In this document: piece after piece, positions 17,919-45,573 of the stretch
Position numbering within the stretch: the first letter of the stretch is position 1
Layout of the letters: every line of letters begins with the position of its first letter
Assembly: GCF_006345805.1 (NCBI RefSeq)
Contig: NC_043004.1
Location: forward strand, 74,214,001 to 74,278,000
Reading direction: 5' to 3'
Source: Octopus sinensis
Lineage: Eukaryota
DNA: 64,000 bases
The notes under the pieces: generated by a model
Database searches by the model: none
Told to the model about the DNA's origin: nothing
What the model saw: the letters and a program-made list of their open reading frames with translations, nothing else
Program-made: the position numbers and the translations under genes

Positions 17919-17967
17919 ATGGTGCAAAGAACATTAATTATTTTTGCTATCCTGCTGTTTGTAACAG
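17919..17967 (+). CDS. Gene A exon 1: signal peptide MVQRTLIIFAILLFVT(A)
   Basis: ATG, hydrophobic core, phase-1 G|GTAAG donor. 43/49 nt identical to gene B exon 1; 4 of the 6 changes are synonymous. Confidence 0.9.
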
Positions 17968-18479
17968 GTAAGAAAAAGTAAAATAGTATATATATTCAAC
18001 TTATCACTTCTCTTTCTTATTCATTTATTGATATTGTGTTGCAGTCATGAGAGAATGTTCATAACATTGTAGTATTTAGTTAAAGCTTTTTCTATCCCTT
18101 TCAATTGGGCCAGGGTTGATGTTAACTTCCAGACATCAGTGGGTTGATTATATACTGTCAAGTCAAATTTTATCCCTTTTCTTAAGTATGAAATCTTGTG
18201 CGTATATTATTAAATTATTATTTTGTTTGAGTCAGTAAAAGTCTCACAAAATCATTACCAGCAGTCCATCAGTTTGTGGTCAATTCTTGCTAAGATTAAC
18301 TTTGCCTTCTTAGTTTTCTGTTCGATAAAATTAGTTTCAGATCCAGAACGAAGATAGATTTCGTCGAGTTTACCCTTGCACCGATGTGTCTGGCCATGTA
18401 ATAAATTAATCATCAGTAGTTTGGCAGAGTCAGTGGAGTGTAGTTAATTCAAATCAGCTTTAATCTTTCTAGGTGAATT

Positions 18480-19380
18480 GCTGATTGTGCAAAGAAGACT
18501 TCAAATGTGACTAGTGGCGATTTTTCTTGAAAATGGACAGTGTTGCATCGTGATGTTATCAAGTACATGCAGAAAAAGTGTTTAGCGTCCAATGACATTC
18601 ATGCTGACATGGTTGCTACATTAGGGGATGAAGCTCCAGCTTTATCAACAATGCAAAAGTGGGAAGCTGAATTTAGGGGAAGGGAGATTCTTGAAAATTG
18701 ATTGTATTCACAACGTTGTGAAGAACGACAGGTGACTGACTATAAATCGAACAGCCAAAGATTTTACAGTATCCTGTGAGAGAGTAGAAACTATTCTGAA
18801 TAATACAATTGGCGTGCTCGGTGGATGCCATTCTCCTAACAACTGATCTAAAGCGCACCAGGCTGATCACATCATGAGAAAATCTGACATTTACACAGAT
18901 CCAGCTGCTTTCCTTAAACATTTCTATTCTATATTGAGTAATGGTTTCATCACTTTGAGCCAGAGGCAAAGAGACAATGCATGCAGTAGAAACAATCCCT
19001 CTTACCTCCTACAAAGAAGGCCAAGGTAGTTTCATCTGCATGGAAGATAATGGCGTCAGTGTTTCGAGATACGAAAGGTACTGCGTTGACTGACTATCTT
19101 CAAAAGAGGCACACCATCAAAGGAGAGTATTATTCGAAATTGATGGAGCAGTGACGAAAAACTACGAAGATCAAGTGTTCCAGAAAACTGACGGACGGGG
19201 TATTTTTCATCAGGACAATGCTCCAGCACACAAATACTGTGTTTAAATGGCTGCTGTACGTGACTGGGGGTTTGAACTAGTTGATCAACTCCCAATTCTC
19301 CTGACTTGGCCCTGTCAGACTATCATCCTCCACATCTAAAAACACTTCGCTGGGAACCAGTATTGCAGTGATGATATATG
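18480..19380 (+). mobile_element. Old mariner remnant (family 2) in gene A intron
   Basis: Remnants DIHADMVATLGDEAPALSTMQKW, HQDNAP and a degenerate PxSPDL-type motif. Homolog in gene B intron (37320-39540); partial copy at 4040-4346. Confidence 0.8.
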
Positions 19381-20876
19381 TTGTTGCTACTAGTTACTTC
19401 TGAAATCTGTTTTTCAAAGGACAGATATCAATTTACCTGTAATGAAGTAATTTTGTTATTAAAAAGGGTTACAATTAATGTATGCAGCATTTCATAGCTC
19501 TAGCGTCACTCTCACATAGTCAGCATATGAAATTTTCAGCCCTCCCTCGCAACAAATCAATGAAACTCACACATATGGACACGGCCCATACATATGTATA
19601 CATATACATTCATATGCATATTTGTGAAGGTGGGAGTGTGTGTATAATTTTGTCTTTCATAAATGCCTGCTGAAAAGTACCAATTACAAGTTAAACGATT
19701 ACTAATGGAAATCATTCCATCTACTTCTCTACACAGATGTTATTGTATTTCATAAAATACATGATTTTGGCGATGTTAGAAAACCCAAAGTGTTACCGTA
19801 TGATATTTAAAGAGACAAAAATAAGATTATAAAGCCACTTAGACAGCAATCAAACGTTGGGTAATCCTATAGATAATGCGGTTTTTTATACTTCTTTTAT
19901 TTTTCAAAATTAAGATAACCAAAGTTCTTTTATAATCTAAAATATACTCTGCTTAATTTTCTACAATACTTTTCCATCTGTCTGCTAGACCTGCAAAGCC
20001 CCTCTTCCAAAATTCACCTGTGCATGATGAAAAATACTCTTCCAGTACTGTTCTGATCTCGTCAGCTTATTTCTGTTACAAATCTATGGATAATTCTGTA
20101 CACATTCGATGCATGAGTTATTCAAATGGGATAAAGAGAATACAATTTAGTCAACTTTCTTAGTGTCACATTTAAATATCAAATGTTGAATAACAACTGT
20201 GTCAGGTCTATGACACACATTAATTTGTTTTATGATCAAGTATGAAAAGTCGAGTAATTAGAAAAAAAAGAAATAGGTATGTCCTAACTACAGTTAAAAT
20301 GTTTTTATTTATAAGTACGGATGATGAGAGAGAAAGAAGGTGAGTGCTGTGTATTATGTCTATGAAATTATTCCTTCCCCAAGCGGATATCATTGTATAT
20401 AAAATTTGTATCATATTCTCACCTCCATGTTTGAAATACACAGCAGTAATAACATCCAGGCAAGGGGATATATTATAATAAATACACAAGTGTATATACA
20501 GCAATTACAATAATAATCCATCGATGGAATTTATAAATATTTTATTGCATCGCTACGCACGTTTCCACAAATTACAAGTTTCTTAATAGCATAGACCATA
20601 TTCTTAGGATAAATGGACTGTAGTCCATGGGCAACCAGTGTCCTCGTTTACATCATGTTCATGCATTCAGTTCTTCGAGCAAAATAATATTAATACATGC
20701 TTAACGGATGTTTTTTTTACGAATTTTGACAAATGAGAAAGTAGACTGGGGTATGTGGGCAGTTTTATAGCAGACTGGTGGGTTGTATGTTCCATTTCAT
20801 TGCGTTTGAGCCTCAGGATGAAGTTAGCATATGTGTGTGTGTGTGTGTGTGTGTGTGTATGCATATATATATGTAC

Positions 20877-20938
<62 letters not shown>

Positions 20939-21054
20939 ATATATATATATATATGGATATGTATATATATATATATACATATATAAAGCAATACAATACG
21001 TGTGTCATAGAGCAAATATTCTATTGTGTGTGTGTGTGTGTATGCATATATATA

Positions 21055-21118
<64 letters not shown>

Positions 21119-21123
<5 letters not shown>

Positions 21124-22117
21124 TAGATAAAACTTAGATATGTTTCGACCAAAGATTGGTCCAGGCCATGTCTAACTTAATAGCACCACCTGATAGGATT
21201 ATTCGAATCCTGTTTAAGTCAAGTTTTGTTTAAGTCAAGTTTTGTTCAAGTAGTGAGTTCTTGTTGGGTGAGTTGTATCCAATTATGGGTGGCTTATCTG
21301 GTATTCTTTGAAGGAATCTATCCAGACTCTGTTTAAAGTTGATGGGATCCTTTTACTCTTTGATCTCCCTCGGGACAATGTTAAATAGGGCAGGGCCTGT
21401 TGAGGAAAAGAAATTATGTTGTTGTGTACATGTATGTTGTGATCTTGAATTTAACAGGGGACGTATAGCCCGTGGTCCAAGTCTTGGATGGACCTTGAAG
21501 CTAATGTTTAGGTCGTTTGGGCAAAGTTGGCGGTATATTTTCCACATCGTACAAATGATGTACCGCTCACGGCGACGCTGTAGGGAGTAAAGTTTCAAGG
21601 CTTTAAGGCGATCCCAATAATCGAGAGCAGCCATGCCTTCAATTTGTTTAGTGAGAGCCCTCTGGGGTGACTCAATTCTGGAGATGTTTTGTCTTGTGTG
21701 AGGAGACCACAGTGGGCAGCAGTATTCAAGGTGTGGCCGTACAAAGGAGGAAAAATGTGGTATGATGACACCTTGTTCTCTGGACCGGAAAGTTCTTAAG
21801 ATCCAGGAACACATCCTACGAGCTATATCGACCTTCTTGTTGATGTGTGCACTCCAACTGAGATCGTCATCAACAATTACACCCAGGTCTCTGATATTGT
21901 TAGAGGCTGCGAGCGGTTCCCCTGAAGGAAGAGAGTATGGTTGTTTTAGTGAGGAATTTCTTCCAAAATGCATCAGCTCAAATTTTCCCTCTTTCAGTTG
22001 CATTTTGTTTCTGTCTGCCCATTGACTCACAGCATATAGATCAGACTGGAGTTGAGTTCGGTCTGCTTCTTCATTGACGATTTGCTGGAACTTAGTGTCA
22101 TCAGCGAATATTTTCAC
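21119..22117 (-). mobile_element. Shorter 5'-truncated copy of the CR1/L2-type LINE in gene A intron
   Basis: Near-identical to 13461-14490; begins at VKIFADDTK, has 2 copies of the 16-bp UTR repeat and sits inside (TA)n. Confidence 0.92.
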
Positions 22118-22120
22118 TGA

Positions 22121-22210
<90 letters not shown>

Positions 22211-22680
22211 ATATGTATATATATATGTATACATATATAAAGGAATACAATACGTGTGTCATAGAGCAAATATTCTATCGTAGGACTTAAACTACGGCAT
22301 TCATCTCGAGAAAACATCTCTTAAAAACATATAGTATTAATAAAGTACTGAAGTATATCACTAGCAAGCGATAATAGCAGCTTCATAATGGCATAGTTAA
22401 ATACAAATGTCTTTCTTCTGCTTTAGATATATGTAGGAGCAAGTATCCTTAAGCAATCGCATGCTAAAATTAATTACTACTAATATACTGTGGGACACAC
22501 AAAAAAAAAAACTGGTTCAGGAGTATCCAGTGGTACAGACGTATCTCGTTGGGTGATAAATAAATAAATAATGTCGTTAAAATGACTGTTCCATAATACA
22601 ACTGTAGAGAGAAAAACAGCCAGACGGAGGAGAATTTTTCATATATACATATAGAAGATCCCAAAATAAAATTGCATAAG

Positions 22681-22722
<42 letters not shown>

Positions 22723-22726
22723 CGTT

Positions 22727-22763
<37 letters not shown>

Positions 22764-23640
22764 ATTATGTATGTATGTATAATGATATTATTGTTTATAA
22801 TAATAATATCAGTGGCTTAGCATGCGTTAAAACCGATAACTGTGAAAAGAAATTATCAATTAATAATTAAGTGTACTAACGTGCTAAATATAGCAGCCAA
22901 GGTAACCAAACCACAAATTTTTCACTAAAACACCAAGTTGAAAGCAAGTAAATGACAGAAAATCCTAAATCCCCGTACCAATGATGAAAATAATCGAAAA
23001 CTGAAAAAGGCATCGTGATTTCGAACGTTGAGAAAAATTCTTAGTTTATCTTTGTGGTTTGGTCATTTTGACTGCTATATTTATAAGCCAGTACTGTTTG
23101 TTAGTACCCTTAATTATTAATCGATATTTTTTTAACGCTATGGGCATTTTATGCATGTTAAGCCACTGATATTATCATAAATAACATTATCCTCATATAT
23201 ATTTAAATAATTTTTATTCACTTCTATCATTTTCTAAAATTTGCTTCGGCATTAAAAACGGTCATCGTACAAATTGGTGAGATGAATAATCTCTATAACC
23301 CTGTAGCAATAAGACTCATTGAAGATAAACTCATTGAAGTTCGATATGACGGTGATACGGGTATGTCTGGCTTCTTCAACTTTCGATTATTTTCCTCATT
23401 GGTAGAGGATTTTGGGATATTTATTCGTTTGCCCGCGTCCACTATTGCGTCTAAATGAAATTTTGTGGTTTGGTCATTTTGACTGCTATATTTAGCATGC
23501 TGGTACTGTTTGTCAGGACCCTCAAGTATTAATATATATATATATAAACCTATTTTCAAATTCACATAATGAATTAAATGTTTCACACACACGCATATAT
23601 ATATATATATGTATGTTTCTACATATTTATATGTATGTGC

Positions 23641-23700
<60 letters not shown>

Positions 23701-23702
<2 letters not shown>

Positions 23703-24420
23703 AGGAGTATCAGGTTCTGTTTGATTTCTTACATCTCATTTTTCAAGACAACTCGATATTTTGATGAACAGCTTAAAGTTGTAACTATCAGATAAATGTT
23801 AGCTGCCATGCAGGGCTAGAATATTGAAAAAGATTTATCTACATCATGATGAATTGTCCCGGGTAAAAAAAATGTCGATATCATGAGTGCTGCCAAATGC
23901 ACTGTGATCACTTTTAAGACGGAGACTACGAAACTGGCCGGTAGGAAGGGACAGAGCAGGCGTTCTGACTGTGCCTGCGCTTCGAAGTTCATCCATCTTC
24001 TTTGAACAGAATGTAAGTCTCAATTCAGATGGTATGAGAATCTTCTGGAGATTGGTCAAACCATAGCCGGAAAGGGTTACTGATTGATCACCATATATGT
24101 GACGGAAAGAAACAGAATAGTTGTCGGAGAATTTCTACGAGTGTACATGCCCTGATTTCTGGCCTCCTACTTCCTCCTATTGTCATCCTATGGATTACTG
24201 TATGTGGGGTGCGGTTTAAGAAGACACCAGCCACTGTGCCTGTAATACAAAGATCGTACTGGTGGTAAAGATCAAGGAGCTCGAAAGTGAAAGTGTTTGA
24301 AAATCTTTCCAAAGATATAGTGAGGGACGCACTACTAGGTTCCGGAAAAGACTCGACGCCGTGGTGGAAGATGTGGACGGCTACCTTGAGTCGACTGTTA
24401 TCTCCAGGCCATAAGCTAGT
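23701..24420 (+). mobile_element. Degenerate Tc1/mariner-superfamily remnant, homolog at 41215-42010
   Basis: Degenerate WPP.SPD..PMDY.MWG-like segment near 24150-24210; aligned to 41215-42010, both preceded by (GT)n and CAGG. Confidence 0.6.
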
Positions 24421-24619
24421 GGATGGTTTTTTTAATAATTTCATTTCTGGATAAGAGATTAAGTTTTCTTTTCCTTTTATGCAATCTTTTAAGTTTGCCC
24501 GCATAACCTTTGATGCATGCACACGCACACACATATACACACATACACATACAAATAAACACACACATAAACATAAATTCATACACACATACATATATAT
24601 TGTCATCGTTCATTTTATT

Positions 24620-25290
24620 TCAAGATTTCTTGCCAATAGAGGAAGAACCGGTTTCTAACCTAGATTCAAGGCTCCTTCATTGAAATTTCAACATTAACAA
24701 CAGGGTATTTCTGTTTGTATGTATGTATGTGTACAGATTTGTATGTTTTGCTTTATGTATGTATTCTCGTGCATATGGTTGCATATCTAGACATGCTCAT
24801 ATATATTTAAATGATAAACTTCCGGAAATTTTTACAGATTTTTACAGTTCCAGTGATGGATTGGATCTGTAGTCTTCGAATTAGTTTTTTCCATTCTGGT
24901 TTTGAGAAGCCAAATTTCTCAAGATTGGTATTTAGGCAGTGCGTTACATATCCCAGTGTGCCAATAATTGCAAGTATAAACCTGAACTTGTAATCTGGAT
25001 AGAGTAAGTGCACATTTCTCAATAGTTCAGTGTAGGTATTCTCTTTTTCACTGATCTTCAGCTTTATGTTAACATCCGCTGGGCAGCTAATTTCCACAAC
25101 TGTACACGGTTTCTCTTCTCTATCCCAAATCATAATATCAGGTCTATCGTGCTTACATTTTATTGAGCTCTTTGGTATATTTCACCAGTATTCCTTTTTA
25201 TTATGAGTGAATATAGCTTCTACCATACTGTGGGTTCTTATTTCTTTGTCCTCGGGGCCATCCCTCCGACGGATTTCATCATAGAGTGTC
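24620..25290 (-). mobile_element. 3' end of an R4/Dong-like LINE (restriction-like endonuclease)
   Basis: HDRPDIMIWDREEKPCTVVEISCPADVN..IIGTLGYV..ITGTVKICKNF (ORF 24807-25133), a PD..E-type RLE motif. Confidence 0.8.
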
Positions 25291-25457
25291 CTAGCTACAA
25301 CGTCGTGTCTCATCGGTAGATAATACCGTGATGACATTTTCAGACAACTGCTTATGATGTGGGTGACTTCTATGAATGTGTGTATTTATGTATATGCATT
25401 TGTAGATATAAATTTGACAAAAATATTTTTCCTTTCCTTTTATATTAAGAATATATA

Positions 25458-25860
25458 GGCGCAGGAGTGGCTGTGTGGTAAGTAGCTTGTTTACCAACCA
25501 CATGGTTCCGGGTTCAGTCTCACTGTGTGGCACCTTGGGCAAGTGTCTTCTACTATAGCCTCGGACCGACCAAAGCCTTTTGAGTGGATTTGGTGGACGG
25601 AAACTGAAAGAAGCCAGTCGTATATATGTATATATATGTATATATGTGTGTGCGTATATGTTTGAGTTTGTCCTCCTAGCATTGTTTGACAACCGATGCT
25701 GGTGTGTTTATGTCCCCGTAACTCAGCGGTTCGGCAAAAGAGACCGATAGAATAAGTACTGGGCTTACAAAGAATAAGTCCCGGGGTCGAGTTGCTCGAT
25801 TAAAGGCGATGCTCCAGCATGGCCGCAGTCAAATGACTGAAACAGTAAAAGAGAGTAAAG
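25458..25860 (+). mobile_element. Full-length tRNA-derived SINE
   Basis: GGCGCAGGAGTGGCTGTGTGGTAAG..GGTTCAGTC head, central (TA/TG) tract, tail CCAGCATGGCCGCAGTCAAATGACTGAAAC. Fragments at 46080-46160 and 62821-62970. Confidence 0.85.
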
Positions 25861-26036
25861 AGAGATATGAAAATAGATTTCAAATTTAATTTTGTTTCTA
25901 AAAATATGCAAAATAACACAAATTTCAGGTATGAATATTTGACCAAGAGACTTTTCTTCGTTTTCCACTTTCCAAACACGTGTTATAATGTTTACCTGAT
26001 AACATGTTCGAATAAAATGCTAAAGGCCGCGAAAAA

Positions 26037-26357
26037 TGCTTCCATATGATCTCCGTACGTTGACCTCTTCGGTTTGGCTGCAATTTTTGAAATTTTAAAA
26101 TTAAGTGAAAATATTCAAATTTGGTGTATTGATGTAATTTTTGACGCTGCATTGCAAGGTTTAATTCCTTTGATCCAGAAAAATTTTGAAAATAGTTACA
26201 GAGGTTTGAATTGTGGTAATTTATATTCAGTCGACAAAAAAGAAAGCATTTGGGAGTTGTCGTTTTGTGCGTGACTGCGATCGTAAGACGACTGAGCTAT
26301 AATGTGAACGTTGCAGCCAAACCGAAGAGGTCAACGTACGGAGATCATATGGAAGCA
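26037..26357. repeat. Perfect 47-bp inverted repeat with 227-bp spacer
   Basis: 26037-26083 is the exact reverse complement of 26311-26357. Confidence 0.9.
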
Positions 26358-26954
26358 CATGTTTTAAGTATTTAATAAGCGAAAATGATTTTAAGAAACC
26401 GTGTAAGCAGCATATTTTGTAGGTTTTCACAATCAGTATGCATTTAATTCGAAAAAGGATTAAACAACACATTATTTTTAAGAGTAGAAAAAGATGGGCA
26501 CAAGCTGGAAAACAGCACAAAAATCACGTGGTCTTTTGTAATCACTTTTCCAGCGTTATATATATATCTATGGGTTTCGATCGGCTAAAACAACTCAAAA
26601 TTTGCAATCCTTTAGAGCTATTAGTTCTTAATTTATTGACTTATGACGAAAGTTCATCTCATGTCAATAATGAGCATACTTAACAACACCAAACTTGAAA
26701 TCAATTGGAACAAAATTGCAGAAATTGAAAAACCGGCAGCCAAACAAAAAAGGACCACGGGCATTTCCATACATTCAGATCTTTGTGAATTAGCTTTTCT
26801 AAAACAAGTTTTCATATAATTTAGATAGATTTCATATAGCTTTTTAATGCAATAAGAACTTCTTGACTGAATAAATTTTATTTTTTTAAATGTGTGTGTA
26901 TTTGTGTATAATACACTTTCCTGTACTCATTTCGATTATTTTCTTACTTTACAG

Positions 26955-27651: not shown

Positions 27652-27708
<57 letters not shown>

Positions 27709-27711
27709 ACA

Positions 27712-29083: not shown

Positions 29084-29128
<45 letters not shown>

Positions 29129-29223: not shown

Positions 29224-29290
<67 letters not shown>

Positions 29291-35450: not shown

Positions 35451-35568
35451 AGAAAAGTGATCAGTGACGGTACGTGGCTTGTGGCGTCCCCACGACCCCA
35501 ATTCATTCTTGTTAATCATACGTTATCCACATTTTTCCATTAATTTCAATCCCGATATCTAATTAGTA

Positions 35569-35631
<63 letters not shown>

Positions 35632-36788
35632 TACACATAGATGCACATATACTCTGATAGAGATTGGGTAGCGTTCAACGTTTTATTTTCATTGTTTGTA
35701 GAACGGAGGCTTATAACAGACGCTAGAAGTGAGCTAGTACATCCTGTAGCAATATTATTCGATTAACGACGCTATGGAGCACAAATGCATGCCGTATCAG
35801 ACTGAAATATTTGTTCCAGTAGATAGTAAACGATATGTCTGTGTGTATGTGTGTTTGCTTTTTTAAAATTTATTTTTTGTTGTTGCTACTGTTCTCGGCA
35901 TCCTTGTTGTTGACGTTGTTTTTGCTAAGTATTATGCCCAGCTTCACATATAAATGTTATGTTTTTTTTTTATTAATTATCTTTTCATTGACCTTGTTTT
36001 GGAAAGTAAATTAGGAAAAACAGGTTTTCTAGCAACATTTTTCAAGACATTTTTCTTAAACAAGTTTCTAAGCCTGAGAGTGCAGCATTGGAAATTTAAA
36101 AGACAAGGTCCACATTGGAAACAACTGTTATAAAGCACAATTTTTTATGAACCTGAAAAATTTCCCTGAACTCCCAATTTACTATATTGCATCCGGTGAC
36201 CCCTAAAAATATTTTTATATATACTCCGGCTGAAAATTCCTGTTCTGAGCAGTCTTACATTTTATTATCTTAAATATTTGTTTATAGAACGGAGGACATT
36301 TAACTGATGCTAAAAGTGAGCTAATACATCCTGTACCAACATTATTTGATTGTTTTCTAACGACGCTTTTGTACATAAATCAATAAAATATCATATTGAA
36401 AGATTTGTACCAGTAGATAGTGAACGTTTAAACATGTTTGAATTTGCATTTTGATTTCAAAATTTACAAAGTAAGACATTATTCATTTTAAATGTGAGAT
36501 GTCGTCTACTGACCCATTCTCTGTATGGAAAAATTTGTCAAGGCATAATGGTATTGCTATCAGGTGTCACAAAACATGATTATTTCAAACGCCACCAATC
36601 AAGTTTGCTTTAATGAAAACAATTAATACTTCCACAAACAAAAGCATATGTTTAAAAATAACCTTCAGACATTCGTATTTCGGATGATATTTGTCAGTCT
36701 TAATTTGCAACTTTTGTTTTCTTAATTATTTTCGTGAGATATTCCCATCACACTCGTTTTGCAATTCGTTTCAATTGTTCACCAAATG

Positions 36789-36824
36789 TATAAATACCGA
36801 CGCTAAAGCCTTCCCGGATCAGTT
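36789..36824 (+). promoter_or_regulatory. Gene B core promoter: TATAAATA and Inr TCAGTT
   Basis: TATAAATA at 36789-36796 lies 32 nt before the A of TCAGTT (36821), which is 24 nt before the ATG. Confidence 0.75.
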
Positions 36825-36844
36825 TTTGATCTGGCAATTTGACC

Positions 36845-36893
36845 ATGATGCAACGAACATTAATCATCTTCGCTCTCCTGCTGTTTGTAACAG
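36845..36893 (+). CDS. Gene B exon 1: signal peptide MMQRTLIIFALLLFVT(A)
   Basis: ATG, hydrophobic core, phase-1 G|GTAAG donor; paralog of 17919-17967. Confidence 0.9.
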
Positions 36894-37319
36894 GTAAGAA
36901 AAATAGACAAACATTTGCATTCCACTTATCTCTTCTCTCTCTCATTTGTGTATTCGTTTTGTGCTGTAGCTATCACTTGGTGGACTGAGAGAATGTTCCT
37001 AACGTTGTGGTATTGGTTAAGGTTTTTTATGTTCCTCGTTTGATAAGGGCCAAGCCGATGTTAACTTTTACTCATCAGTGGGGGTCGATGATAGACAGTC
37101 AAGTCTAGTCTTATCCCTTTCCTTAACCTATGAAATCTTGTGCGTATGTTATTAAATCACGATTACATGAGATATTTAATTAATTATATTCTGCCTTAAA
37201 CTTTGTTCTGCTGGATTTTCTGAAAACTAGCAAAATACGAAGGTAGACGGAATGAATTTTGGATGTATTCATTTCAACTTTTCTAATTAATAACTACACT
37301 TTCCCTTCAAGCTAGCCTG

Positions 37320-39540
37320 AAGTCTGACTAAAGAAGACTTCAAAAGTAATTTTTTGGCCACTTTCCTTGAAAAAGGAAGACGTTTCGCATCGTGGTTTTA
37401 TAAACTAAATGCAGAAAAATGGTTTATCCCACAATGACATTCATGCTAACATGGTTGCTACATGTGTGGATTACTCTCTAGCTTCATCAACGGTGCAAAA
37501 GTGAGTAGCTGAATTTAGGAGGGGAAGGGTGTGACTTGAAGATAACCAAAGGTCCAGACGTCCTGCAACTACGACGCCAAAAAAAACATTGACCATGTAT
37601 GTATACTACGTGTTGCAGGATGACAGGTGACTGACTATAAATCAAACAGCTAATAGTTTTATTCCGTGAGAGAGTTGAGTATATTCTGCACAATAACCAT
37701 GGCATGCTCGGTGCATGCTAGTTTTATCCCGGTGGTCATATTACGATGAAATCTAACATTTAGACACATCCAGTTGGCTTCCATAAATGTTTCCTAACCT
37801 ATGTTAGGTGTTGGCTTCATCACTTTGAACCAGAGACAAAGAGACAATCCATGCAAAAGGAACACCCATGCTCACATGCCACAAAGAAGGCCAAGGTTGT
37901 TTCGTCTGCAGAGAAGATAGTCGTCTCGGATTTTGAGAATAGAAAAGGTACTGCGTTTATTGACTATCTTGAAAAGGGTCTCACTGTCAATGGAGAGTAT
38001 TACGTGATCTTGCTGCAGAAGTTACGAAACGCTACCAAGATCAAACGTCCAGGAAAACTGACGAAAAGGAGAATAATCTTTTCATCGGAACAATGCTCCA
38101 GCACACAAGTCCTTCGTTTCAATGGCTGTTGAGCATGACTGTGGCTTTGAACTACGAGGGGCGTTCAATAAGTAATGCCCCTGACCCACTTCCCATAGCA
38201 GTAGAGCAACGAAACTTGGCACAGTTATTAGTCTTTTTCTACATAGCAACCACCCAGAGATACACATTTCTCCCATTGTTTGATGCAGCTCTGGAGACCG
38301 TTTTTGTAGAAGACCCCAGCTTGGTCCTCCAACCTGAACGTGACTTCAGAAATCAAGGCTGCATCATCTGGGAAACGCTTTGCTTTCAAAAACAACTTCA
38401 TGATTGGGAAGAGGTGAAAATCAGAGGGTGCAAGGTCAGGAAAGTAGGGGGATGGGGGAGGAGTTCATAGCCATACGCCTGTGCTTCTGATATGGCGACA
38501 AGCGAGTTGTGGACCGGAGCGTTGTCCTGCAGGAGGAGGATGTCTTTGCTGATCTTGCCCCACCTCTTGTTTTTGATAGCTTCTCTTAATTTCCTCAAAA
38601 GTGAAGCATAATAGGCTCCTGCAATTGTGGTACCCTTTGCCAAGAAATCTGTCATCACTACTCCGTCCTGGTCCCAGAAGACTGTGAGCATGACCTTGCC
38701 AGCGGAGGGCTGCACCCATGCCTTCTTTGGAGGGGGTGAGTCACGGTGCTTCCACTGCATTGACTGGGCTTTGGTCTCTGGATCATCGTGATGGACCCAG
38801 GTTTCATCCTGTGTAATCAGTCTTTTGAAAGATTTTGACTCATCTTCTTGGCACATCTCCAAATTCACCCTCGAGCACTCGACGCGTTCTTGCTTCTGGA
38901 AAGGCGTGAGCAACCTGGGAATCAATCTGGCAGACACCTTTTGCATATGCAAATGGTCATGAATGATAGTTTCCACAGACCCGGTACTAATCTTGACCTC
39001 ATGGGCTATTAGCGAATAATTATGCGTCGATCTTCCAAAATGGCAGCCTCAACTTGACGGACAGATGCCTCATCAATGGCAGAAGGGGCAACCAGATCTG
39101 GGAGCTGTTTCCACAGAGTTCCGACCATGTTTGAATTCACGATGCCAGCGTTTTACAAGGTCATATGATGGGGCATCATCACCATAAGTTACTTTCATTT
39201 CATCAAAAGTCTCCCGTGGTGTGCGTCCTTTCAAATACAAAAACCGGATCACTGCTCGACACTCAACAGGCTCCATTTCACACTTGACTCGGTTCAAACA
39301 CCTGTAAATCAGAAACCACAATTAATTCAGAGCTGTAATTTGCCACTTACTCTATAGAGATATAAATGATTGCACATGCAAAATTTCCAACAACTGCAAG
39401 TGGGTCAGAGGCATTACTTATTGAACGTCCCTCGTACTTGATCGCCTCCCAAATCTCATTGACTTGGCCCTATCTGACTATCATCTTTTCCCCGAGTAAA
39501 ATCTACTTTGCTGGAAATTAGTATTGCAGTGATGATGACG
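37320..39540 (+). mobile_element. Old mariner remnant (family 2) split by the copy-3 insertion
   Basis: Homolog of 18480-19380, interrupted at GAAC-TA (38153) and resuming at 39437. Confidence 0.8.
38153..39436 (-). mobile_element. Full-length mariner element copy 3, nested in an older mariner
   Basis: TIRs with TA duplication; ORF fragments 38398-38976 (QDETW, QDNAP) and 39073-39321. Confidence 0.95.
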
Positions 39541-40239
39541 TTATGTCTGTTGTTGCAACTAGTTACATTTGAAATCTTCTTGAAGGGTCAGACATCAGTT
39601 TATCTGGAAAGACACAGAGCAGCTATTAAGAAGAAGGGCATCAATTAAAGCGCACAAGATTTCACAGCTCTAGCATCTCTCCATCGTAATAATCCTTTGA
39701 AATTTTCAGCCCCATCCCCTCAAAGTAAATTTGTCCCAGTTGACCAATCTCTATTGAAATATGTGTGAGTATTTTACCGATTATAGAAACGTATGAATAT
39801 CCTAAACTTAATTCCTTTCATCTGCTTTTGTATGTGGAAACTTTTATATGAAGTAGATATATATTTCACCTGATAGATTTTCATACAGTCTAACACAATA
39901 ATCACATGAAGTTAAGCATCCTTTAAAAGTCGTTGATAACCATTCACACCAGATTTCTCAGCTGCATAGACGAATATCCGCTTACACAAATTTATGCAAT
40001 CAAACATATGGACACATGCACATACATATCTGTACGTATACATTCATATGCACGTATGTGAAGGTGGGTGTGTGTGCATAATTTTGTCTTAATAAACGCC
40101 TGCTGAAAAGTTTACCTTACCTTTTCAATTCATGTCGGCTTCCCGGTTTCATAAATATTTTTCAAAATTTTTTATCAGTGGCCAGCATATTAAAATACCT
40201 CTTGAGGTGAAAATTATAAACAATTATAAATAAGTGTAA

Positions 40240-41050
40240 ATGGAAAATTCTATGCCAGTATTCTGAAAAAATAGACTATACTCTCGCGGCGTCCAACAAC
40301 ATCAGAGACTTGGGAGTAATTGTGGACAACAACGTAAGCTGGGCCACTCATATAAACACCAAAGTTGACATGGCCCGCAGAATGTGTTCCTGGATTCTCA
40401 GAACTTTCCAGTCGAGAGATATCCACACCATTATCCTTCTCTTCTCCACTTTTGCCCGACCCCACCTTGAATACTGTTGTCCACTGTGGTCTCCCCACAC
40501 AATACAAGGTATCATAAAAGTTGAAGCACCTCAAAGGGCAATCACAAAAAAGATAGATGGCATGACAGGCCTCGACTATTGGGGTCGGCTAGAAAAGCTA
40601 AAACTCTATTCTCTCCAACGTCCTCGTGAGCGCTACATCATCTGCATGATGTGGAAAATATTCCATCAGCATTGCCCAATGATGTTGGCATCACCTTTAA
40701 GGTACATCCAAGGCTTGGGCCCCGTGCAATCCGCCCAAAACAAAATCGCACTCTCATCTCATAACAACAATACGGCACAATTATTTCACCTCAATTGGCC
40801 CCGCTCTCTTTAACATTACACCAAAACACATTAAAACAGAAACTGACCCTATAGGGTTCAAGAAGTCTTTGGACAGATTCCTTCAAGAAATCCCGGATAA
40901 ACCCCCTACACCCGGATATGTCTCTGTAAACAATAACTCTCTACTTGAGTGGGCCATAGTGCCCAAATTCTGACTTGAAAGACTTCACCAGGTGGTGCTA
41001 TTAAGTTAGACATGGCCTGGGCCAATAATGGCCGAAACCTATCAAAGTAT
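40240..41050 (+). mobile_element. Diverged subfamily copy of the CR1/L2-type LINE 3' part
   Basis: ORF 40310-40813 reads RPHLEYCCPLWSP..LEKLKLYSLQR. The 3' end GGTGGTGCTATTAAGTTAGACATGGCC is shared with 13461 and 21119. Confidence 0.9.
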
Positions 41051-42010
41051 CAAAGTATATATATATACATATATAATGTGTTTTATATATATGTATACAT
41101 TTATGTATATATATATACATATTGCACCTTCACATGTTTACTTAACTTATACATACAACCACACAGACTTATATACATGTATGTTTCTATATATTTATAT
41201 GTGTGTGTGTGTGTGCAGGGGCTACGGGCTGCATTTGGCCCCTTTTCGCGTCTCATTTTTCAAAACCAACTTGATGTATTTGGTGAACAGTCGACGGCGA
41301 CGAAGAGCATGAATCCTAAATTTGTAGCTGAGCAAAAGTTACCTGCCATGCAGGACTAAAACACTGGAAGCGATTTACTTACAGCATGACGATTTGCACC
41401 GGGTGAAATAAGGCCGACATCATGAATGCTGCTCAGTGCACTGAGAACACTGTAAAGACAAAAGACGTGAGATAGCCAGCTGCAACGAAGACTACGAAAC
41501 TGTGACCAACAAGATGGAGTGGGGTACACCACAGACTTTTTCACTGTTTCCACATCCCGAAATTCAACCGACATCTCTGAACAGAGTGTTACTTTCTATT
41601 CAGATGGTTATAAGAAGCTACTAAAAGTTGTGGTCAAATCCTGTCTAGAAATGATTGCTGCGTAAGAGCTGTGTGGCAGCAGGATTCGATTCCTTGTCAT
41701 ATTTTCGGAAAGAAGCAGAAGAGTTGTCGGAGAACTTCTACGACTTTGCTCGCTCCAAATCCTTGCCTTGTACTTCCGCTCACCATCATGCCATAAATTA
41801 CTATGTGGGCGGAGGGGGAGTGATTTAGAAAGACATTGACCATTCTGCCTGTAACACAACAAAGGTCATGCTTCTGGTCAAGATCAAGAAGCTCGAAATT
41901 CCCTGTGCTCAAAGATCTTTTCGGGGACATAATGAGGAACGCATGCACTAGGCTCCGGAACTGTCTTGAGACCGTGATGGACGCTGATGATTGCTATATT
42001 GAGTCAAGAA

Positions 42011-42600
42011 CGGTGAGCTGGCAGAACCGTTAGCACGCCGGGCGAACAGCTTAGCGGTATTTCGTCTGCCGTTACGTTCTGAGTTCAAATTCCATCGAGG
42101 TCGACTTTGCCTTTCATCCTTTCGGGGTCGATTAAATAAGTACCAGTTACGCACTGGGGTTGATATAATCGATTTAATCCGTTTGCCTGTCCTTGTCTTT
42201 CCCCTCTGTGTTTAGCCCCTTGTGGGTAGTAAAGAAATAGGTATTTCGTCAACCGCTACGTTCTGAGTTCAAATTCCGCCGAGATCGACTTTGCCTTTCA
42301 TCCTTTCGGGATCGATTAAATAAGTACCAGTTCCGCACTGGGGTCGATATAATCGACTTAATCCGTTTGTCTGTCCCAGTTTGTCCCCTCTGTGTTTCGC
42401 CCCTTGTGGATAGTAAAGAAATAAGTATTTCGTCTGCCGTTACGCTCTGAGTGCGCCGAGGTCGATTTTGCCTTTCATCCTTTCGGGATCGATTAAATAA
42501 TTACCAGTTCCGCACTGGGGTTGATCTAATCGACTTAATCCCTTTGTCTGTCCTTGTCCCCTCTATGTTTAGCCTCCTGTGGGCAATAAAGAAATATATA
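42011..42600 (+). mobile_element. SINE with one head and three tandem body units of about 180 bp
   Basis: GGTGAGCTGGCAGAACCGTTAGCACGCCGGG head, then GTATTTCGTC..GTAAAGAAATA repeated at about 42057, 42241 and 42425. Confidence 0.85.
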
Positions 42601-43429
42601 TTGAGTCGATTGTTATCTCCCAGCCACATTTCACTTGATATCTTTTTTAATACTTTCATTTGTGAATGAGAGACTGTTTCCTTTTCAATTTATGCAAACT
42701 GTTAAGTTAACACGAATACCATTACATGCGCGCGAGCTCACACACACATATGCATACATACATACATACATACATACATACATACATACATACATACATA
42801 CATACATACATACATACATACATACATACATACTTGCGTTTTCTTATCTCATCGGTATTGCAGAGCAGTTTTCGTCGGTGGTGGTTTTGTTAGATTCAGG
42901 CATAATCGTGTTCGCGAAATTCCACGTAGTATAAGAAATATCTTTGAAATCCACTTTGGATAATGCTACGTTGGAATAATCCTACGTTCTCTTATAATGG
43001 TAGAAATAAACCAGTTACCGATTTATGCTGAGAGTCGGCATAAATGTTTAAAGGAACGTTCAAAAATTATATTTTTAAACGGCTATCTACACCTACACGT
43101 TTGAACTCAGAACATAACGGCAGACGAAATACGGTTACGCATTTCGCCCGGGGTGCTAACGTTTCTGCCAGCTCGCGCCTAAATACAATTTGTAAGTGAA
43201 ACAGTAAAACTCTGCAAGATTTTGCACAAGTATAAACTGTAAATTTTTTTTATCTACAAGGCGGTGCTCCAGCATGGCCACAGTCACATGACTGAAACAA
43301 ATAAAAGAATGCAAAAGACAGAGCGTTGTATCTTTATTAGAAATCACCTCTTCCTTCAGAGGAAAATTTTAAATGATAAAATAGAGAAGATACGTACATA
43401 CATACATAAATTCGTACATACCTAAGTAT

Positions 43430-43454
43430 ACATGTATGTATGTATGTATGTATG

Positions 43455-43488
<34 letters not shown>

Positions 43489-43546
43489 TGTATGTATGTA
43501 TGTATGTATGTATGTATGTATGTATGTATGTATGTATGTATGTATG

Positions 43547-43580
<34 letters not shown>

Positions 43581-43582
43581 TG

Positions 43583-43616
<34 letters not shown>

Positions 43617-43871
43617 TGTATGAATGAATGTATGTATGTATGAATGCATGTATGTATGTATGTATGTATGTATGTATGCATATATGTATTATGCATGTAT
43701 GTATGTATGTATGTATGTGTGTGTGTATGTATGTTTGTATGTATATATGTTTGTATGTATGTATGTGTGTACGTATGTATATATGTATGTTTGTGTGTAT
43801 GTATGTATGTGTGTATGTATGTGTGTATGTATATATGTATGTATATATGTATGTATATGTATATATGTATG

Positions 43872-43902
<31 letters not shown>

Positions 43903-43907
43903 GTATG

Positions 43908-43939
<32 letters not shown>

Positions 43940-43947
43940 TGTATGTA
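43430..43947. repeat. Long compound (TATG)n microsatellite
   Basis: About 520 bp of TATG/TGTA variants; further tracts at 7562-7640, 42750-42835 and 44880-45110. Confidence 0.95.
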
Positions 43948-44880
43948 GAAAAGCGCCTCTAGAGTCGGCGAGACATATGCAGAAAGACAAAGATAAAGGT
44001 GTACAAGGCATGTGTGCTCCCTTCTCTTCTCTATGCCTGCGAAACGTGGGTCACATATCGATACCACCTTAAACGACTGGAACGTTTCCATCAGATGTGT
44101 CTCAGACGGATCTATGGCATTAAGTGGAAGGACCTCATCAGTGATCTTGAAATATTGGAAGGCTCTCGGTGTGAAAGTATAGAAGCTCTTGTGTTAAAGC
44201 AAAGGCTCAAATGGAGTGGTCATCTGGTCAGAATGAAGGATTCAAGGATGCCAAAACAACTCTTTTATGGAGAACGTCCTCCACATAAACCAAAAAAGAG
44301 GTATAAGGACTTGCTGAAGGCTTCCTTAAGAGATGCTTGAATCTATCCTGACACATGGGAAGGCATAGCTATTGAGCATAGCAGGTGAAGAAGGATTGTG
44401 CACGAGCGGACAGCCACTTTTTGAGAAATCTCGAGTTGCACATGAGAAAGTAAGGAAGGATGTTAGGAAGGGCATCACTGTTACACTTCTAGAAGGGAAG
44501 GGTCTTCCTTTGATGCTGACATGCAGTCTCTGTGCAAGACCCTGTCTCAGTAAAGCTGGACTCATGAGTCATCTTCGCAGTCATAAAACGAGACAGATGA
44601 GTGACAACCTGGCCACTGCTGTGGTGTAACACACCATACTAATCATATCTGTCGGGCATGTGGAAGAGAGTGTAATTCGGCAGGAGGACTTAAACGACAT
44701 GCAAAGGTACATGAAGCCCAGTTACAACTACAGCCGGCTATTACCAGTAAAGGTAATTGCCAATTCTGTACAAAACATTGTAGATCTTTGGCTGGGCTAA
44801 AAAGTCACATTCGATCACAGCACCAGTAACAGTTAAGCTTCGTGCAATGGCCATACTCGATAACGAGGAGGCAGCCATAA
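43948..44880 (+). mobile_element. RTE-clade LINE 3' end with three C2H2 zinc fingers, followed by (TATG)n
   Basis: VYKACVLPSLLYACETW..WSGHLVRM..PKQLFYGE, then CSLC..HLRSH, CRAC..HAKVH and CQFC..HIRSQH (stop at 44829). Confidence 0.85.
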
Positions 44881-45331
44881 TGTATGTATGTATGTATGTA
44901 TGTATGTATGTATGTATGTATGTATGTATGTATGTATGTATGTATGTATGCATGTATCAATATATGTATGAATGAATGTATGTATATATGTATGCCTGTA
45001 ACTGCATATGTATGTATTATGTATGTATGTATGTATTATGTATGTATGTATGTATGTATGTATGTATGTATGTATGTATGTATGTATGTATGTATGTATG
45101 TATGTATGTGCGTGCATATATAGATACAGATTTGAGAAGAAAATTACTTTCTTTGAATGTTCACATTATATGAAAGTAGATTTCTAATTTAATTTTTTCT
45201 CTAAAATATGTGAATTAATATGGATGTGATGTGTGGATATTTGACCAAGCGACTCTTTCTTGTTTTCCACTTTCCAAACGCATGTGTTGTAAGGTTTACT
45301 GATAACATTTATTTATTTTCTTCATTTACAG

Positions 45332-45573
45332 CAGTGCAGTCTTTTCATCCATGGTATTACTGTTATCCTGGAGGTTGGTATAATTCACTGACTCACCTCT
45401 GTTGCAGCAACGGCATCGTGGTTAAAGGTCCGAATAATGCCTGCTGTGGAACAACCCCTTTTATTTACCCAACTCAAAGATGTTGTGGATCGCAAGTATA
45501 CCCAGTGGGTAATTTGAATCACTGTTGTTATGATGTTCATTGGCCTGGTTATATCCATTATTACTTATGTTAA
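45332..45573 (+). CDS. Gene B exon 2: galaxin-like di-cysteine repeat peptide (A)VQSFHPWYYCYPGGWYNSLTHLCCSNGIVVKGPNNACCGTTPFIYPTQRCCGSQVYPVGNLNHCCYDVHWPGYIHYYLC*
   Basis: TTTACAG acceptor, phase matches exon 1. Four CC pairs spaced by 11-12 residues; AATAAA at 45858. Confidence 0.9.

What the first reader, a model, noticed from the sequence alone, without database searches (positions are those of the whole stretch)
17919..45573. Tandem family of secreted Cys-rich peptides with a conserved signal exon and a rapidly diverging mature exon
Seen: two genes 18.9 kb apart share promoter, exon structure, colinear intron fossils, 3' UTR and polyA position. Signal peptides are 18/20 identical with mostly synonymous changes, while mature regions differ in CC-repeat number (2 vs 4 pairs) and composition (10 Trp in A vs 10 Tyr in B). 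Gene A is absent from the ORF track because of its short exons and long intron. Established: this pattern is typical of toxin and antimicrobial peptide families. Inference: a lineage-specific defence, venom or secreted-matrix family, possibly unannotated.
Basis: partly seen in the sequence, partly recalled or inferred. Interest (0 to 1): 0.85.

Follow-up and report, generated by a model that had tools for sequence, protein, structure and literature searches.

The report
Octopus tandem mini-galaxin peptide genes
Two neighbouring two-exon octopus genes encode small secreted cysteine-rich peptides of the known galaxin-like family; they are real and evolve in a modular way, but relatives are already in databases and their function is untested.

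Summary
Two same-strand, two-exon genes 18.9 kb apart (A, 72 aa; B, 96 aa) share promoter, a 49-nt signal exon, phase-1 intron, colinear intron remnants, 3'UTR and polyA signal. Their mature exons differ in CC-pair number (2 vs 4) and composition (10 Trp vs 10 Tyr).

It is not an unknown family. B passes Pfam's Galaxin_repeat cutoff and has an 86% identical orthologue named "galaxin-like" in Octopus sinensis. A has a 71/72 identical "hypothetical protein" in O. vulgaris. A third member lies about 63 kb downstream of A in O. vulgaris, outside this window, and three short relatives exist in O. bimaculoides. Relatives of this short subfamily were found only in Octopus.

"Rapidly diverging mature exon" is only partly right. 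Between species, A's exon 2 is unchanged (0/171 nt). B's loops change at about the neutral rate or faster, with all 10 Cys fixed; positive selection is not proven. A third "copy" of A's 5' end (window 1-4346) has an error-like indel profile and is probably an assembly artefact.

Most likely these are secreted disulfide-laddered beta-hairpin peptides acting at epithelial surfaces, perhaps antimicrobial like squid galaxins. Expression and function are untested. This is a new member of a known kind, of modest interest.

The parts
17595..17918 (+). Gene A proximal promoter and 5'UTR. It contains an ATTTGCAT octamer-like motif (17768-17775), a CAATTG motif and a TATA-like CATAAGTA (17854-17861).
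   Evidence: This block is 83-84% identical to the promoters of B and C, and 76% to that of the unlinked gene D, against about 70% further upstream.
17919..17967 (+). Gene A exon 1: 49 nt, encoding M-V-Q-R-T-L-I-I-F-A-I-L-L-F-V-T plus the first base of the next codon. This is most of the signal peptide. The donor is GTAAGA.
   Evidence: It is 49/49 identical in O. vulgaris. The same exon is used in the O. vulgaris model CAI9727409.1.
17968..26954 (+). Gene A intron: 8,987 nt, phase 1. It carries remnants colinear with B's intron, a LINE reverse-transcriptase fragment (about 21077-22118) and microsatellites.
26955..27124 (+). Gene A exon 2 CDS: the end of the signal peptide (A-V-Q-S) and a 52-aa mature peptide with 7 Cys, 2 CC pairs, 10 Trp, net charge about +4. 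Stop TGA at 27122-27124.
   Evidence: It shows 0/171 nt differences from O. sinensis and 1/171 from O. vulgaris.
27125..27445 (+). Gene A 3'UTR up to the AATAAA polyA signal (27440-27445).
   Evidence: It is homologous to B's 3'UTR (27143-27658 vs 45576-46080, 68%; z=22).
36560..36844 (+). Gene B proximal promoter and 5'UTR, with TATAAATA at 36789-36796. The stretch from about 36590 to 36830 is 93-100% identical to the promoter of paralogue C in O. vulgaris.
36845..36893 (+). Gene B exon 1 (49 nt, signal peptide), donor GTAAGA.
   Evidence: It is 47/49 identical in O. sinensis and is part of the NCBI model XP_036361356.1.
36894..45331 (+). Gene B intron: 8,438 nt, phase 1. It contains a mariner-type transposon (38153-39437), a 184-bp SINE-like unit in 3 copies (42056-42596) and (ATGT)n arrays (43432-43947, 44880-45109).
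45332..45573 (+). Gene B exon 2 CDS: the end of the signal peptide plus a 76-aa mature peptide with 10 Cys, 4 CC pairs 11-13 residues apart and 10 Tyr. Stop TAA at 45571-45573.
   Evidence: Pfam Galaxin_repeat 33.6 bits against a cutoff of 28. It shows 16/242 nt differences from O. sinensis, 14.5 nonsynonymous against 1.5 synonymous in the mature part, with all Cys kept.
45574..45863 (+). Gene B 3'UTR up to the AATAAA signal (45858-45863).
1..4346 (+). 'Copy 0': a 97.7% duplicate of 14447-18777, which is A's upstream region, exon 1 and 0.8 kb of intron. The exon-1-like piece at 3480-3527 has a 1-nt deletion. No exon 2 follows it. It is probably an assembly artefact or a badly polished recent duplicate.
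   Evidence: It differs from A by 45 indel events but only 7 isolated substitutions, whereas A against O. vulgaris over the same columns shows 7 indels and 31 isolated substitutions. No site is private to A.

Best explanation
The locus holds two functional members (A and B) of an Octopus-specific tandem cluster of 'mini-galaxin' genes.

Gene plan. Each gene has the same two-exon plan. A conserved proximal promoter of about 250 bp and a 49-nt exon supply the signal peptide. A phase-1 intron of about 8-9 kb follows. One further exon carries the last four signal-peptide residues, the whole mature peptide and the 3'UTR.

The peptides. The mature peptides are short versions of the galaxin di-cysteine repeat (single Cys, then CC pairs every 11-13 residues, then a C-terminal Cys). 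They are predicted to fold as a disulfide-laddered stack of beta-hairpins.

How the family grew. It expanded by tandem duplication, followed by gain or loss of whole CC repeats (2 in A, 4 in B and C, 5 in the O. bimaculoides B orthologue). Inter-Cys loops were replaced freely, while the Cys framework, signal peptide and promoter stayed fixed, partly perhaps through gene conversion.

A and B are now under different regimes. A (Trp/His/Arg-rich, cationic) is conserved between species. B (Tyr-rich, near neutral) changes its loops at or above the neutral rate.

Shown versus inferred. Shown here: gene structure, family membership of B, orthologues, synteny, conservation patterns. Inferred: secretion, from heuristic signal-peptide features. 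Also inferred is the function. I think the most likely role (about 40%) is an extracellular one at epithelial or mucosal surfaces in host-microbe interaction or antimicrobial defence, by analogy with Euprymna scolopes galaxins. A role as a cross-linked structural matrix component comes next (about 30%).
For: Structure and duplication.

Family:
- Pfam Galaxin_repeat scores against a cutoff of 28 bits: B 33.6, C 36.8, P0004 50.1, P0003 41.5, D 68.3.
- The profile search found 169 relatives, mostly long multi-repeat galaxins with the CCG...CC pattern.

Orthologues and independent gene models:
- XP_036361356.1 'galaxin-like' in O. sinensis, 86% identical to B.
- CAI9727409.1 in O. vulgaris, 71/72 identical to A.
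- A's exon 2 is present and identical in O. sinensis DNA.

Cluster extent: gene C lies 63 kb downstream of A on the same strand in O. vulgaris.

Constraint pattern:
- All 10 Cys are conserved while 42-44% of non-Cys residues differ between O. bimaculoides and O. vulgaris-group orthologues (p=0.006-0.008).
- Between paralogues B and C, all 10 Cys are conserved while 70% of the other residues differ (p=3e-5).
- A's exon 2 shows 0/171 differences against 28/967 in its flanks (p=0.007). B's shows 16/242 against 82/2306 (p=0.014). A against B gives p=3e-4.

Promoter module.

Signal peptide: Arg4, a 12-residue hydrophobic core (mean Kyte-Doolittle 2.9), V-Q-S at positions -3 to -1, and a confident helix at residues 2-21 in the model.

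Fold: a 7-sequence AlphaFold model with mean pLDDT 74.9 and ten short strands forming five hairpins.

Functional analogy: ten EsGal genes are highly expressed in the symbiotic organs of E. scolopes, and repeat-derived peptides inhibit bacteria (PMC12773714).
Against: No transcript, tissue or peptide evidence was obtainable. The exact A and B proteins are absent from the 15-billion-protein collection, and no transcript-derived copy was found.

A itself is below the Pfam cutoff (16 bits), so it is placed in the family only by paralogy.

Both proteins are far shorter than described galaxins. B is nearly uncharged (+1), unlike the cationic EsGal proteins (+5 to +21.5), which weakens the antimicrobial analogy for B.

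The apparent faster-than-neutral rate of B rests on clustered multi-nucleotide changes. Counted as events, it is 11/291, no different from the flanks (p=0.46). The N:S excess alone is not significant (p=0.13).

The structure model is of moderate confidence only (pTM 0.48), and its disulfide pairing could not be inspected.
Confidence: 0.7

Rival explanations
1. Structural matrix role. The peptides are secreted building blocks or cross-linkers of an extracellular material such as cuticle, sucker lining, beak or radula, stylet or statolith matrix, or egg capsule. They would work like coral galaxin or bivalve galaxin-like shell proteins, with aromatic and His residues and A's unpaired Cys mediating cross-links.
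For: - Galaxin was first described as a coral skeletal organic-matrix protein, and Cys-rich repeats are typical of framework proteins (PMC2726143).
- A galaxin-like protein, Cysrichin, is a mussel shell matrix protein (PMC10045328).
- The mature peptides are 24-38% Trp/Tyr/Phe/His. A has an odd Cys count (7), which leaves one Cys free for intermolecular bonds.
- A's strong conservation fits a structural partner better than an arms-race molecule.
Against: Octopus has little mineralised tissue, and no proteome or paper links these proteins to any matrix. B's freely changing loops are unusual for a framework protein. Tissue of expression is unknown.
Confidence: 0.3
2. Venom or salivary toxin family. 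This would be a conotoxin-like superfamily with a conserved signal sequence and a hypervariable disulfide-rich mature toxin, expressed in the posterior salivary gland.
For: The signal exon and promoter are conserved while the mature exon diverges. The Cys framework is fixed and the loops are variable. The family expanded in tandem within one lineage.
Against: There is no propeptide or dibasic processing site (sequence). The family scaffold is galaxin, which has no known toxin member in the papers searched. Gene A is highly conserved between species. There are no expression data.
Confidence: 0.1
3. The ORFs are not functional genes. They would be decaying remnants of a duplicated galaxin gene, or chance ORFs that gene predictors picked up.
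For: B evolves at about the neutral rate between the window species and O. sinensis. No transcript evidence was found.
Against: - The ORFs, GT/AG sites and every Cys are intact in the window, O. sinensis and O. vulgaris, and for the B and C lineages also in O. bimaculoides, despite 42-44% loop divergence.
- A's exon is more conserved than its flanks (p=0.007).
- The proximal promoter is more conserved than the surrounding DNA in all paralogues.
- B passes a curated Pfam threshold.
Confidence: 0.05

Closest known systems
Galaxin / galaxin-like proteins (Pfam PF24748 Galaxin_repeat): coral Galaxea and Acropora galaxins, bivalve Cysrichin
   Same: An N-terminal signal peptide followed by tandem units built around di-cysteine (CC) motifs with the CCG...(Y/F)(D/N)...CC pattern and 11-13 residue spacing. 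They are extracellular. B, C and the O. bimaculoides relatives score above Pfam's curated cutoff.
   Different: The octopus proteins are much shorter: 72-96 aa with 2-4 CC pairs, against about 300-660 aa with many 30-aa repeats. They are very rich in aromatic residues and His, have no acidic domain and no dibasic processing site, and end on a Cys. A is below the Pfam cutoff. No link to mineralisation is known in octopus.
Euprymna scolopes galaxins EsGal1-10 (PMC12773714)
   Same: Cephalopod members of the same repeat family that expanded within a lineage. They are secreted by epithelia. Short repeat-derived peptides are antimicrobial, which is the best functional precedent for short CC-repeat peptides.
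   Different: EsGal proteins are longer, have up to 7 repeats and are strongly cationic (+5 to +21.5), whereas A is +4 and B +1. Octopus has no light organ or accessory nidamental gland. The profile searches returned no squid protein among the short signal-peptide-sharing members.
Conotoxin-type gene superfamilies and other toxin or antimicrobial peptide families (works like; not a member)
   Same: A conserved signal sequence, a fixed Cys framework and rapidly changing inter-Cys loops, with expansion by tandem duplication.
   Different: There is no propeptide exon. The plan has two exons rather than three. There is no sequence relationship. One member (A) is slow-evolving. Positive selection is not demonstrated.
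Granulin and IGFL small CC-containing secreted proteins
   Same: Small secreted proteins with several CC pairs. Granulins fold as disulfide-laddered beta-hairpin stacks, as this model suggests for B.
   Different: There is no Pfam hit to granulin at E<=10. The IGFL hits are below cutoff (12.7-16.9 bits against 25). Foldseek against the PDB found no match and neither did the PDB sequence search.

Membership tests
Galaxin-like repeat family (Pfam PF24748) | Score at or above Pfam's curated gathering threshold (28 bits): gene B | tested here: met
   B scores 33.6 bits, E=4.3e-8. The orthologue P0001 carries PF24748 in the precomputed annotation. Paralogue C scores 36.8 bits.
Galaxin-like repeat family (Pfam PF24748) | Score at or above Pfam's curated gathering threshold (28 bits): gene A | tested here: not met
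   A scores 16.0 bits, E=0.012, and its O. vulgaris orthologue scores the same. A is linked to the family only by paralogy: shared promoter, signal exon, intron phase, 3'UTR and tandem position. Its C-terminal half also resembles that of C and P0004.
Galaxin-like repeat family (Pfam PF24748) | Tandem units with di-cysteine motifs at regular spacing | tested here: met
   B has the pattern C, CC, CC, CC, CC, C with spacings of 12, 12, 11, 12 and 13 residues. A has C, C, CC, CC, C with spacings of 4, 11, 11 and 19. Long relatives show the same CCG...CC pattern.
Galaxin-like repeat family (Pfam PF24748) | N-terminal signal peptide / extracellular protein | tested here: met
   This was a heuristic test only, as no SignalP was available. 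The N-terminus has Arg4, a 12-residue hydrophobic core (mean Kyte-Doolittle 2.9) and V-Q-S at positions -3 to -1. The model has a confident helix at residues 2-21. Secretion itself was not tested.
Canonical galaxins (coral type) | Protein of about 300 aa or more made mostly of repeats of about 30 aa, each with two CC motifs (PMC2726143) | tested here: not met
   A is 72 aa and B is 96 aa, so the mature parts are 52 and 76 aa with 2 and 4 CC motifs.
Canonical galaxins (coral type) | Component of a biomineral organic matrix | not testable with these tools
   No expression or proteome data were available, and no paper mentions these accessions.
Cephalopod antimicrobial galaxins (EsGal type) | Strong net positive charge (+5 to +21.5) and antibacterial activity of repeat peptides | tested here: inconclusive
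   Mature A has charge +4.1 and pI 8.8. Mature B has +1.1 and pI 7.7, against the EsGal values in PMC12773714. Activity cannot be tested here.
Conotoxin-like toxin superfamily architecture | Signal, propeptide and mature toxin regions, with a dibasic cleavage site | tested here: not met
   There is no pro-region and no KR/RR site. The mature peptide starts directly after the predicted signal cleavage site (sequences).

The most novel reading that the evidence does not exclude
The Octopus mini-galaxin cluster is a previously undescribed class of epithelial or glandular effector peptides that evolved by shrinking a galaxin gene to 2-4 CC repeats. A promoter and signal-exon cassette, kept uniform by gene conversion, drives co-expression. 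The mature exon diversifies by repeat gain and loss and by loop replacement. A (Trp/His/Arg-rich) would be a conserved membrane-active antimicrobial peptide. B and C would be fast-evolving partners engaged with changing microbial or prey targets.
Probability: 0.25. Interest if true: 0.55.

Novelty: new member of a known kind. Interest (0 to 1): 0.35.

Why it matters
If expressed, these would be the shortest galaxin-repeat proteins described, with essentially one to two repeats as a free-standing secreted peptide. They would therefore be a tractable system for finding out what the di-cysteine repeat does and how it folds. No solved structure resembles it.

The cluster also shows modular evolution clearly. 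Promoter, signal exon and Cys framework are frozen, while repeat number and loops are free. The two neighbours are under opposite regimes.

Practically, the work shows that short two-exon genes with 8-9 kb introns are annotated inconsistently across Octopus assemblies: A only in O. vulgaris, B only in O. sinensis, and C as a chimeric model. It also flags a probable false duplication in this assembly.

Tried and rejected
1. A third functional gene from 'copy 0' (window 1-4346). tblastn, a CC-rich ORF scan, a sensitive blastn and an acceptor-motif search found no exon 2 between 4347 and 14446. Its differences from A are dominated by indels and look like errors. I do not call it a pseudogene.

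2. My own error. In one search I read hits at 25231-25716 as a fourth gene (D) next to C in O. vulgaris. One search showed that the file held two records and that those hits belong to O. sinensis locus L004, 36 Mb from B's orthologue. The claim is withdrawn.

3. Positive selection on B. Counted per nucleotide, the nonsynonymous rate is 2.2 times the flank rate (p=0.002). But the changes cluster in codons 42-44, 60-61 and 79-80, and an event-based count equals the flanks (p=0.46). The N:S test alone gives p=0.13. I therefore claim only omega of about 1 or above.

4. B and C as a recent duplicate pair. Their overall non-coding identity is about 73%, like A-B and A-C. Only about 240 bp of promoter plus exon 1 is near-identical.

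5. Structure. The 4-sequence model was unusable, with pLDDT 49. The 7-sequence model is moderate, with pLDDT 74.9. Foldseek against the PDB and a PDB sequence search both gave nothing.

6. Granulin and IGFL membership: no hits, or hits below threshold.

7. The bacterial promoter/terminator scan does not apply to a eukaryotic locus. Rfam gave no hits.

8. Literature searches for octopus galaxins or for the accessions found no study of these peptides.

9. The window's species could not be named. It is about 97% identical to O. vulgaris GCA_951406725.2 and about 95% to O. sinensis.

Full report
**1. The observation**

- Gene A starts at ATG 17919. Its 49-nt first exon ends at 17967 before a GTAAGA donor. 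After an 8,987-nt phase-1 intron, a polypyrimidine tract and TTTACAG acceptor lead into exon 2 at 26955, which runs to a TGA at 27122-27124.
- Gene B repeats this plan: exon 1 at 36845-36893, exon 2 at 45332-45573, stop TAA at 45571-45573.
- The spliced products are 72 and 96 aa.
- The first 20 residues are 18/20 identical. Exon 1 differs at 6 of 49 nt (4 synonymous), and the first 12 nt of exon 2 are identical.
- The 19-nt acceptor/exon-2 junction occurs exactly twice in the window, against none in 100 shuffles.

A self-comparison of the window gives a colinear chain:
- promoter and exon 1: 16599-18215 against 35573-37157, 74%
- four intron blocks
- the 3'UTR: 27143-27658 against 45576-46080, 68%

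AATAAA signals lie at homologous positions (27440 and 45858). The composition claims are exact: 10 Trp and 2 CC pairs in mature A, 10 Tyr and 4 CC pairs in mature B. By alignment z-score against shuffles, the mature-coding part is the least alignable part of the unit apart from the intron's last 150 nt (z=1.3): z=6, against 50 for the promoter, 26 for the start of the intron and 22 for the 3'UTR.

**2. What it is**

Pfam places B in PF24748, Galaxin-like repeats, above the curated cutoff (33.6 against 28 bits). A scores 16 bits, below it.

B has a full-length, 86% identical orthologue that NCBI names 'galaxin-like' (XP_036361356.1, Octopus sinensis). A has a 71/72 identical 'hypothetical predicted protein' in O. 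vulgaris (CAI9727409.1).

The window is about 97% identical to the O. vulgaris chromosome and about 95% to O. sinensis in non-coding DNA. It therefore comes from an Octopus of the vulgaris group; the exact A and B proteins are not in the protein collection.

Annotation is patchy:
- O. sinensis DNA contains A's exon 2 unchanged, but no A model was found.
- O. vulgaris has no B model between the consecutive accessions CAI9727408 and CAI9727409.

**3. Extent of the family**

An exhaustive profile search found 169 relatives at E<=0.001. Most are 200-1,100 aa multi-repeat galaxins with the CCG...(Y/F)(D/N)...CC pattern. Only a handful are short and share the signal peptide MMQRTLIIF..LLFVTAVQS, and all are from Octopus:
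- O. bimaculoides A0A0L8FU16 (94 aa)
- O. bimaculoides A0A0L8G8N6 (85 aa)
- O. bimaculoides A0A0L8FGL5, an exon-2-only ORF call of a B orthologue with five CC pairs
- the N-terminus of O. vulgaris CAI9727408.1

In O. vulgaris, CAI9727408.1 starts about 63 kb downstream of A on the same strand. Read as a two-exon gene (L003 10001-10049 and 14229-14467), it gives a 95-aa family member, which I call C. The annotated 350-aa model leaves exon 2 at an internal site and joins exons more than 22 kb away, so it is probably chimeric. The tandem cluster therefore has at least three members and runs past the right end of this window.

A longer relative, which I call D (168 aa, 10 CC pairs, 'galaxin-like' XP_036361078.1), lies 36 Mb away in O. 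sinensis. It has the same two-exon plan and a recognisably homologous promoter and signal exon.

I first mis-assigned D to the O. vulgaris cluster because two loci were stored in one file. One search corrected this.

**4. How it evolves**

The proximal 250 bp or so of promoter is 83-84% identical among A, B and C, and 76% identical to D, against about 70% further out. It holds an ATTTGCAT octamer-like motif, two CAATTG motifs and a TATA-like box. Within it, B (window) and C (O. vulgaris) are 93-100% identical from about 36590 to 36830. This fits a gene-conversion tract or very strong constraint.

In the mature exon the Cys framework is frozen and the rest is free:
- B against its O. bimaculoides orthologue keeps 10/10 Cys while 42% of the other aligned residues differ (p=0.008). 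That orthologue also has one extra CC repeat.
- C against its O. bimaculoides counterpart keeps 10/10 Cys with 44% of other residues changed (p=0.006).
- B against C keeps 10/10 Cys with 70% of other residues changed (p=3e-5).

A looks like a C-type gene that lost its two middle repeats and extended a Trp/His tail.

Between the window and O. sinensis the two neighbours behave in opposite ways:
- A's exon 2 has 0/171 differences, against 28/967 in its flanks (p=0.007).
- B's exon 2 has 16/242 differences, against 82/2306 in its flanks (p=0.014). In the mature part this is 14.5 nonsynonymous against 1.5 synonymous changes, giving dN 0.085 and dS 0.033.
- A against B directly gives p=3e-4.

There is a caveat. 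B's changes cluster in adjacent codons (42-44, 60-61, 79-80). Counted as 11 events in 291 nt, the rate equals the flanks (p=0.46), and the N:S excess alone is not significant (p=0.13). I therefore claim only that B's loops evolve at about the neutral rate or faster, under purifying selection on the Cys scaffold. I do not claim positive selection.

**5. How it probably works**

The N-terminus has the features of a cleavable signal peptide: Arg4, a 12-residue hydrophobic core, and V-Q-S before the predicted cleavage site. It is a confident helix in the model.

With a 7-sequence alignment, AlphaFold gives mean pLDDT 74.9 and pTM 0.48 for B. The model has ten short strands, that is five beta-hairpins, with the CC pairs in or next to the strands. 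This suggests a disulfide-laddered hairpin stack. No solved structure matches by fold or by sequence.

Mature A is cationic (+4), 38% aromatic plus His, and has an odd number of Cys (7). Mature B is near neutral.

For function there is only analogy:
- In Euprymna scolopes, ten galaxins are among the most specifically expressed genes of the symbiotic organs, and repeat-derived peptides inhibit bacteria (PMC12773714).
- In corals and a mussel, galaxin-type proteins are skeletal matrix components (PMC2726143, PMC10045328).

My estimates are about 40% for an epithelial host-microbe or antimicrobial role, about 30% for a structural matrix or cross-linking role, about 10% for a salivary toxin role, and the remainder for other or no function. 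No paper deals with these octopus peptides or cites their accessions.

**6. The third copy**

Window 1-4346 duplicates 14447-18777 at 97.7%, and its left end is cut by the window edge. Its exon-1-like piece (3480-3527) has a 1-nt deletion and a 2-nt deletion at the donor. No exon 2 follows.

In a three-way comparison with O. vulgaris, 56 sites are private to copy 0, 43 to O. vulgaris and none to gene A. Copy 0 differs from A by 45 indel events (35 of 1 bp) but only 7 isolated substitutions. Over the same columns, the real species divergence shows 7 indels and 31 isolated substitutions. This is the signature of consensus error, not evolution. Copy 0 is probably a false or badly polished duplication, and its 'frameshift' should not be read as pseudogenisation.

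**7. Verdict**

This is a tandem, lineage-restricted family of small secreted Cys-rich peptides with a conserved signal module. However, it belongs to the known galaxin-like repeat family, relatives are already in public databases under that name, one of the two genes is slow-evolving, and the function is untested. I rate it a new member of a known kind, with modest interest (0.35).

Noticed in passing
window 1-4346 (against 14447-18777): A 97.7% duplicate of gene A's upstream region, exon 1 and the start of its intron. Its private differences are 45 indels against 7 isolated substitutions, and no site is private to gene A. It is probably a false duplication or an unpolished segment in the assembly. 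Its left end is cut by the window edge.
   Followed up: yes
window 38153-39437 (also 9442-10734 and 27711-28993): Three copies, about 92.5% identical, of a 1.3-kb Mos1/mariner-type transposon (Pfam Transposase_1 and HTH_48). The copy in gene B's intron is absent from the orthologous O. sinensis site. It is flanked by a TA duplication and inverted terminal repeats, so it looks like a lineage-specific insertion of a recently active element.
   Followed up: partly
window 36590-36830 against L003 about 9740-9990 (O. vulgaris gene C): About 240 bp of proximal promoter is 93-100% identical between paralogues B and C, whose other non-coding DNA is about 70-73% identical. This is a candidate gene-conversion tract or a very strongly constrained regulatory module. 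Conserved motifs include ATTTGCAT, CAATTG (twice) and a TATA-like box.
   Followed up: partly
L003 10001-105956 (O. vulgaris OX597821.1, model CAI9727408.1): The annotated 350-aa protein joins the signal exon and half of a mini-galaxin mature exon to exons more than 22 kb downstream ('Seven cysteines N-terminal domain'). The complete two-exon reading gives a 95-aa family member ending in the conserved C-terminal Cys, so the model looks chimeric.
   Followed up: partly
L004 (O. sinensis CM016866.1, about 38.5 Mb), gene XP_036361078.1: A 168-aa, 10-CC-pair 'galaxin-like' gene 36 Mb from the A/B locus. It shares the two-exon plan, a phase-1 signal exon (46 nt) and a 76% identical proximal promoter. 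It may resemble the longer ancestor of the mini-galaxins.
   Followed up: partly
proteins P0107, P0014, P0095 (profile search hits): Galaxin-type CC-repeat proteins also occur in records labelled bacterial or metagenomic. One example is HEV7506427.1 from a Thermoanaerobaculia MAG, on a 140-kb contig. Another is a 17-member cluster from ENA, Logan and JGI contigs. Whether these are true bacterial genes or eukaryotic contamination was not examined.
   Followed up: no
window 62295-62537 (- strand): An open segment matching Pfam Ribosomal_S9 (51 bits).
   Followed up: partly
window 42056-42596; also 52605-52914, 58360-58537, 59218-59398: A 184-bp unit repeated three times in tandem in B's intron, with dispersed copies (75-84% identical) elsewhere in the window. 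It looks like a SINE. Rfam gave no hit.
   Followed up: no
window 13422-14491 and 21077-22118; ORF 13657-15009 (-): Two LINE-type reverse transcriptase fragments, 95% identical (Pfam RVT_1). One lies just upstream of the copy 0/A duplication boundary and one lies inside gene A's intron. Such repeats could have mediated the duplication or confused the assembler.
   Followed up: no
gene A mature peptide (window 26967-27121): Mature A has 7 Cys, because of an extra Cys at mature position 1 that is kept in O. vulgaris. All other family members have even counts. This suggests a free thiol or an intermolecular disulfide (dimer or cross-link).
   Followed up: no
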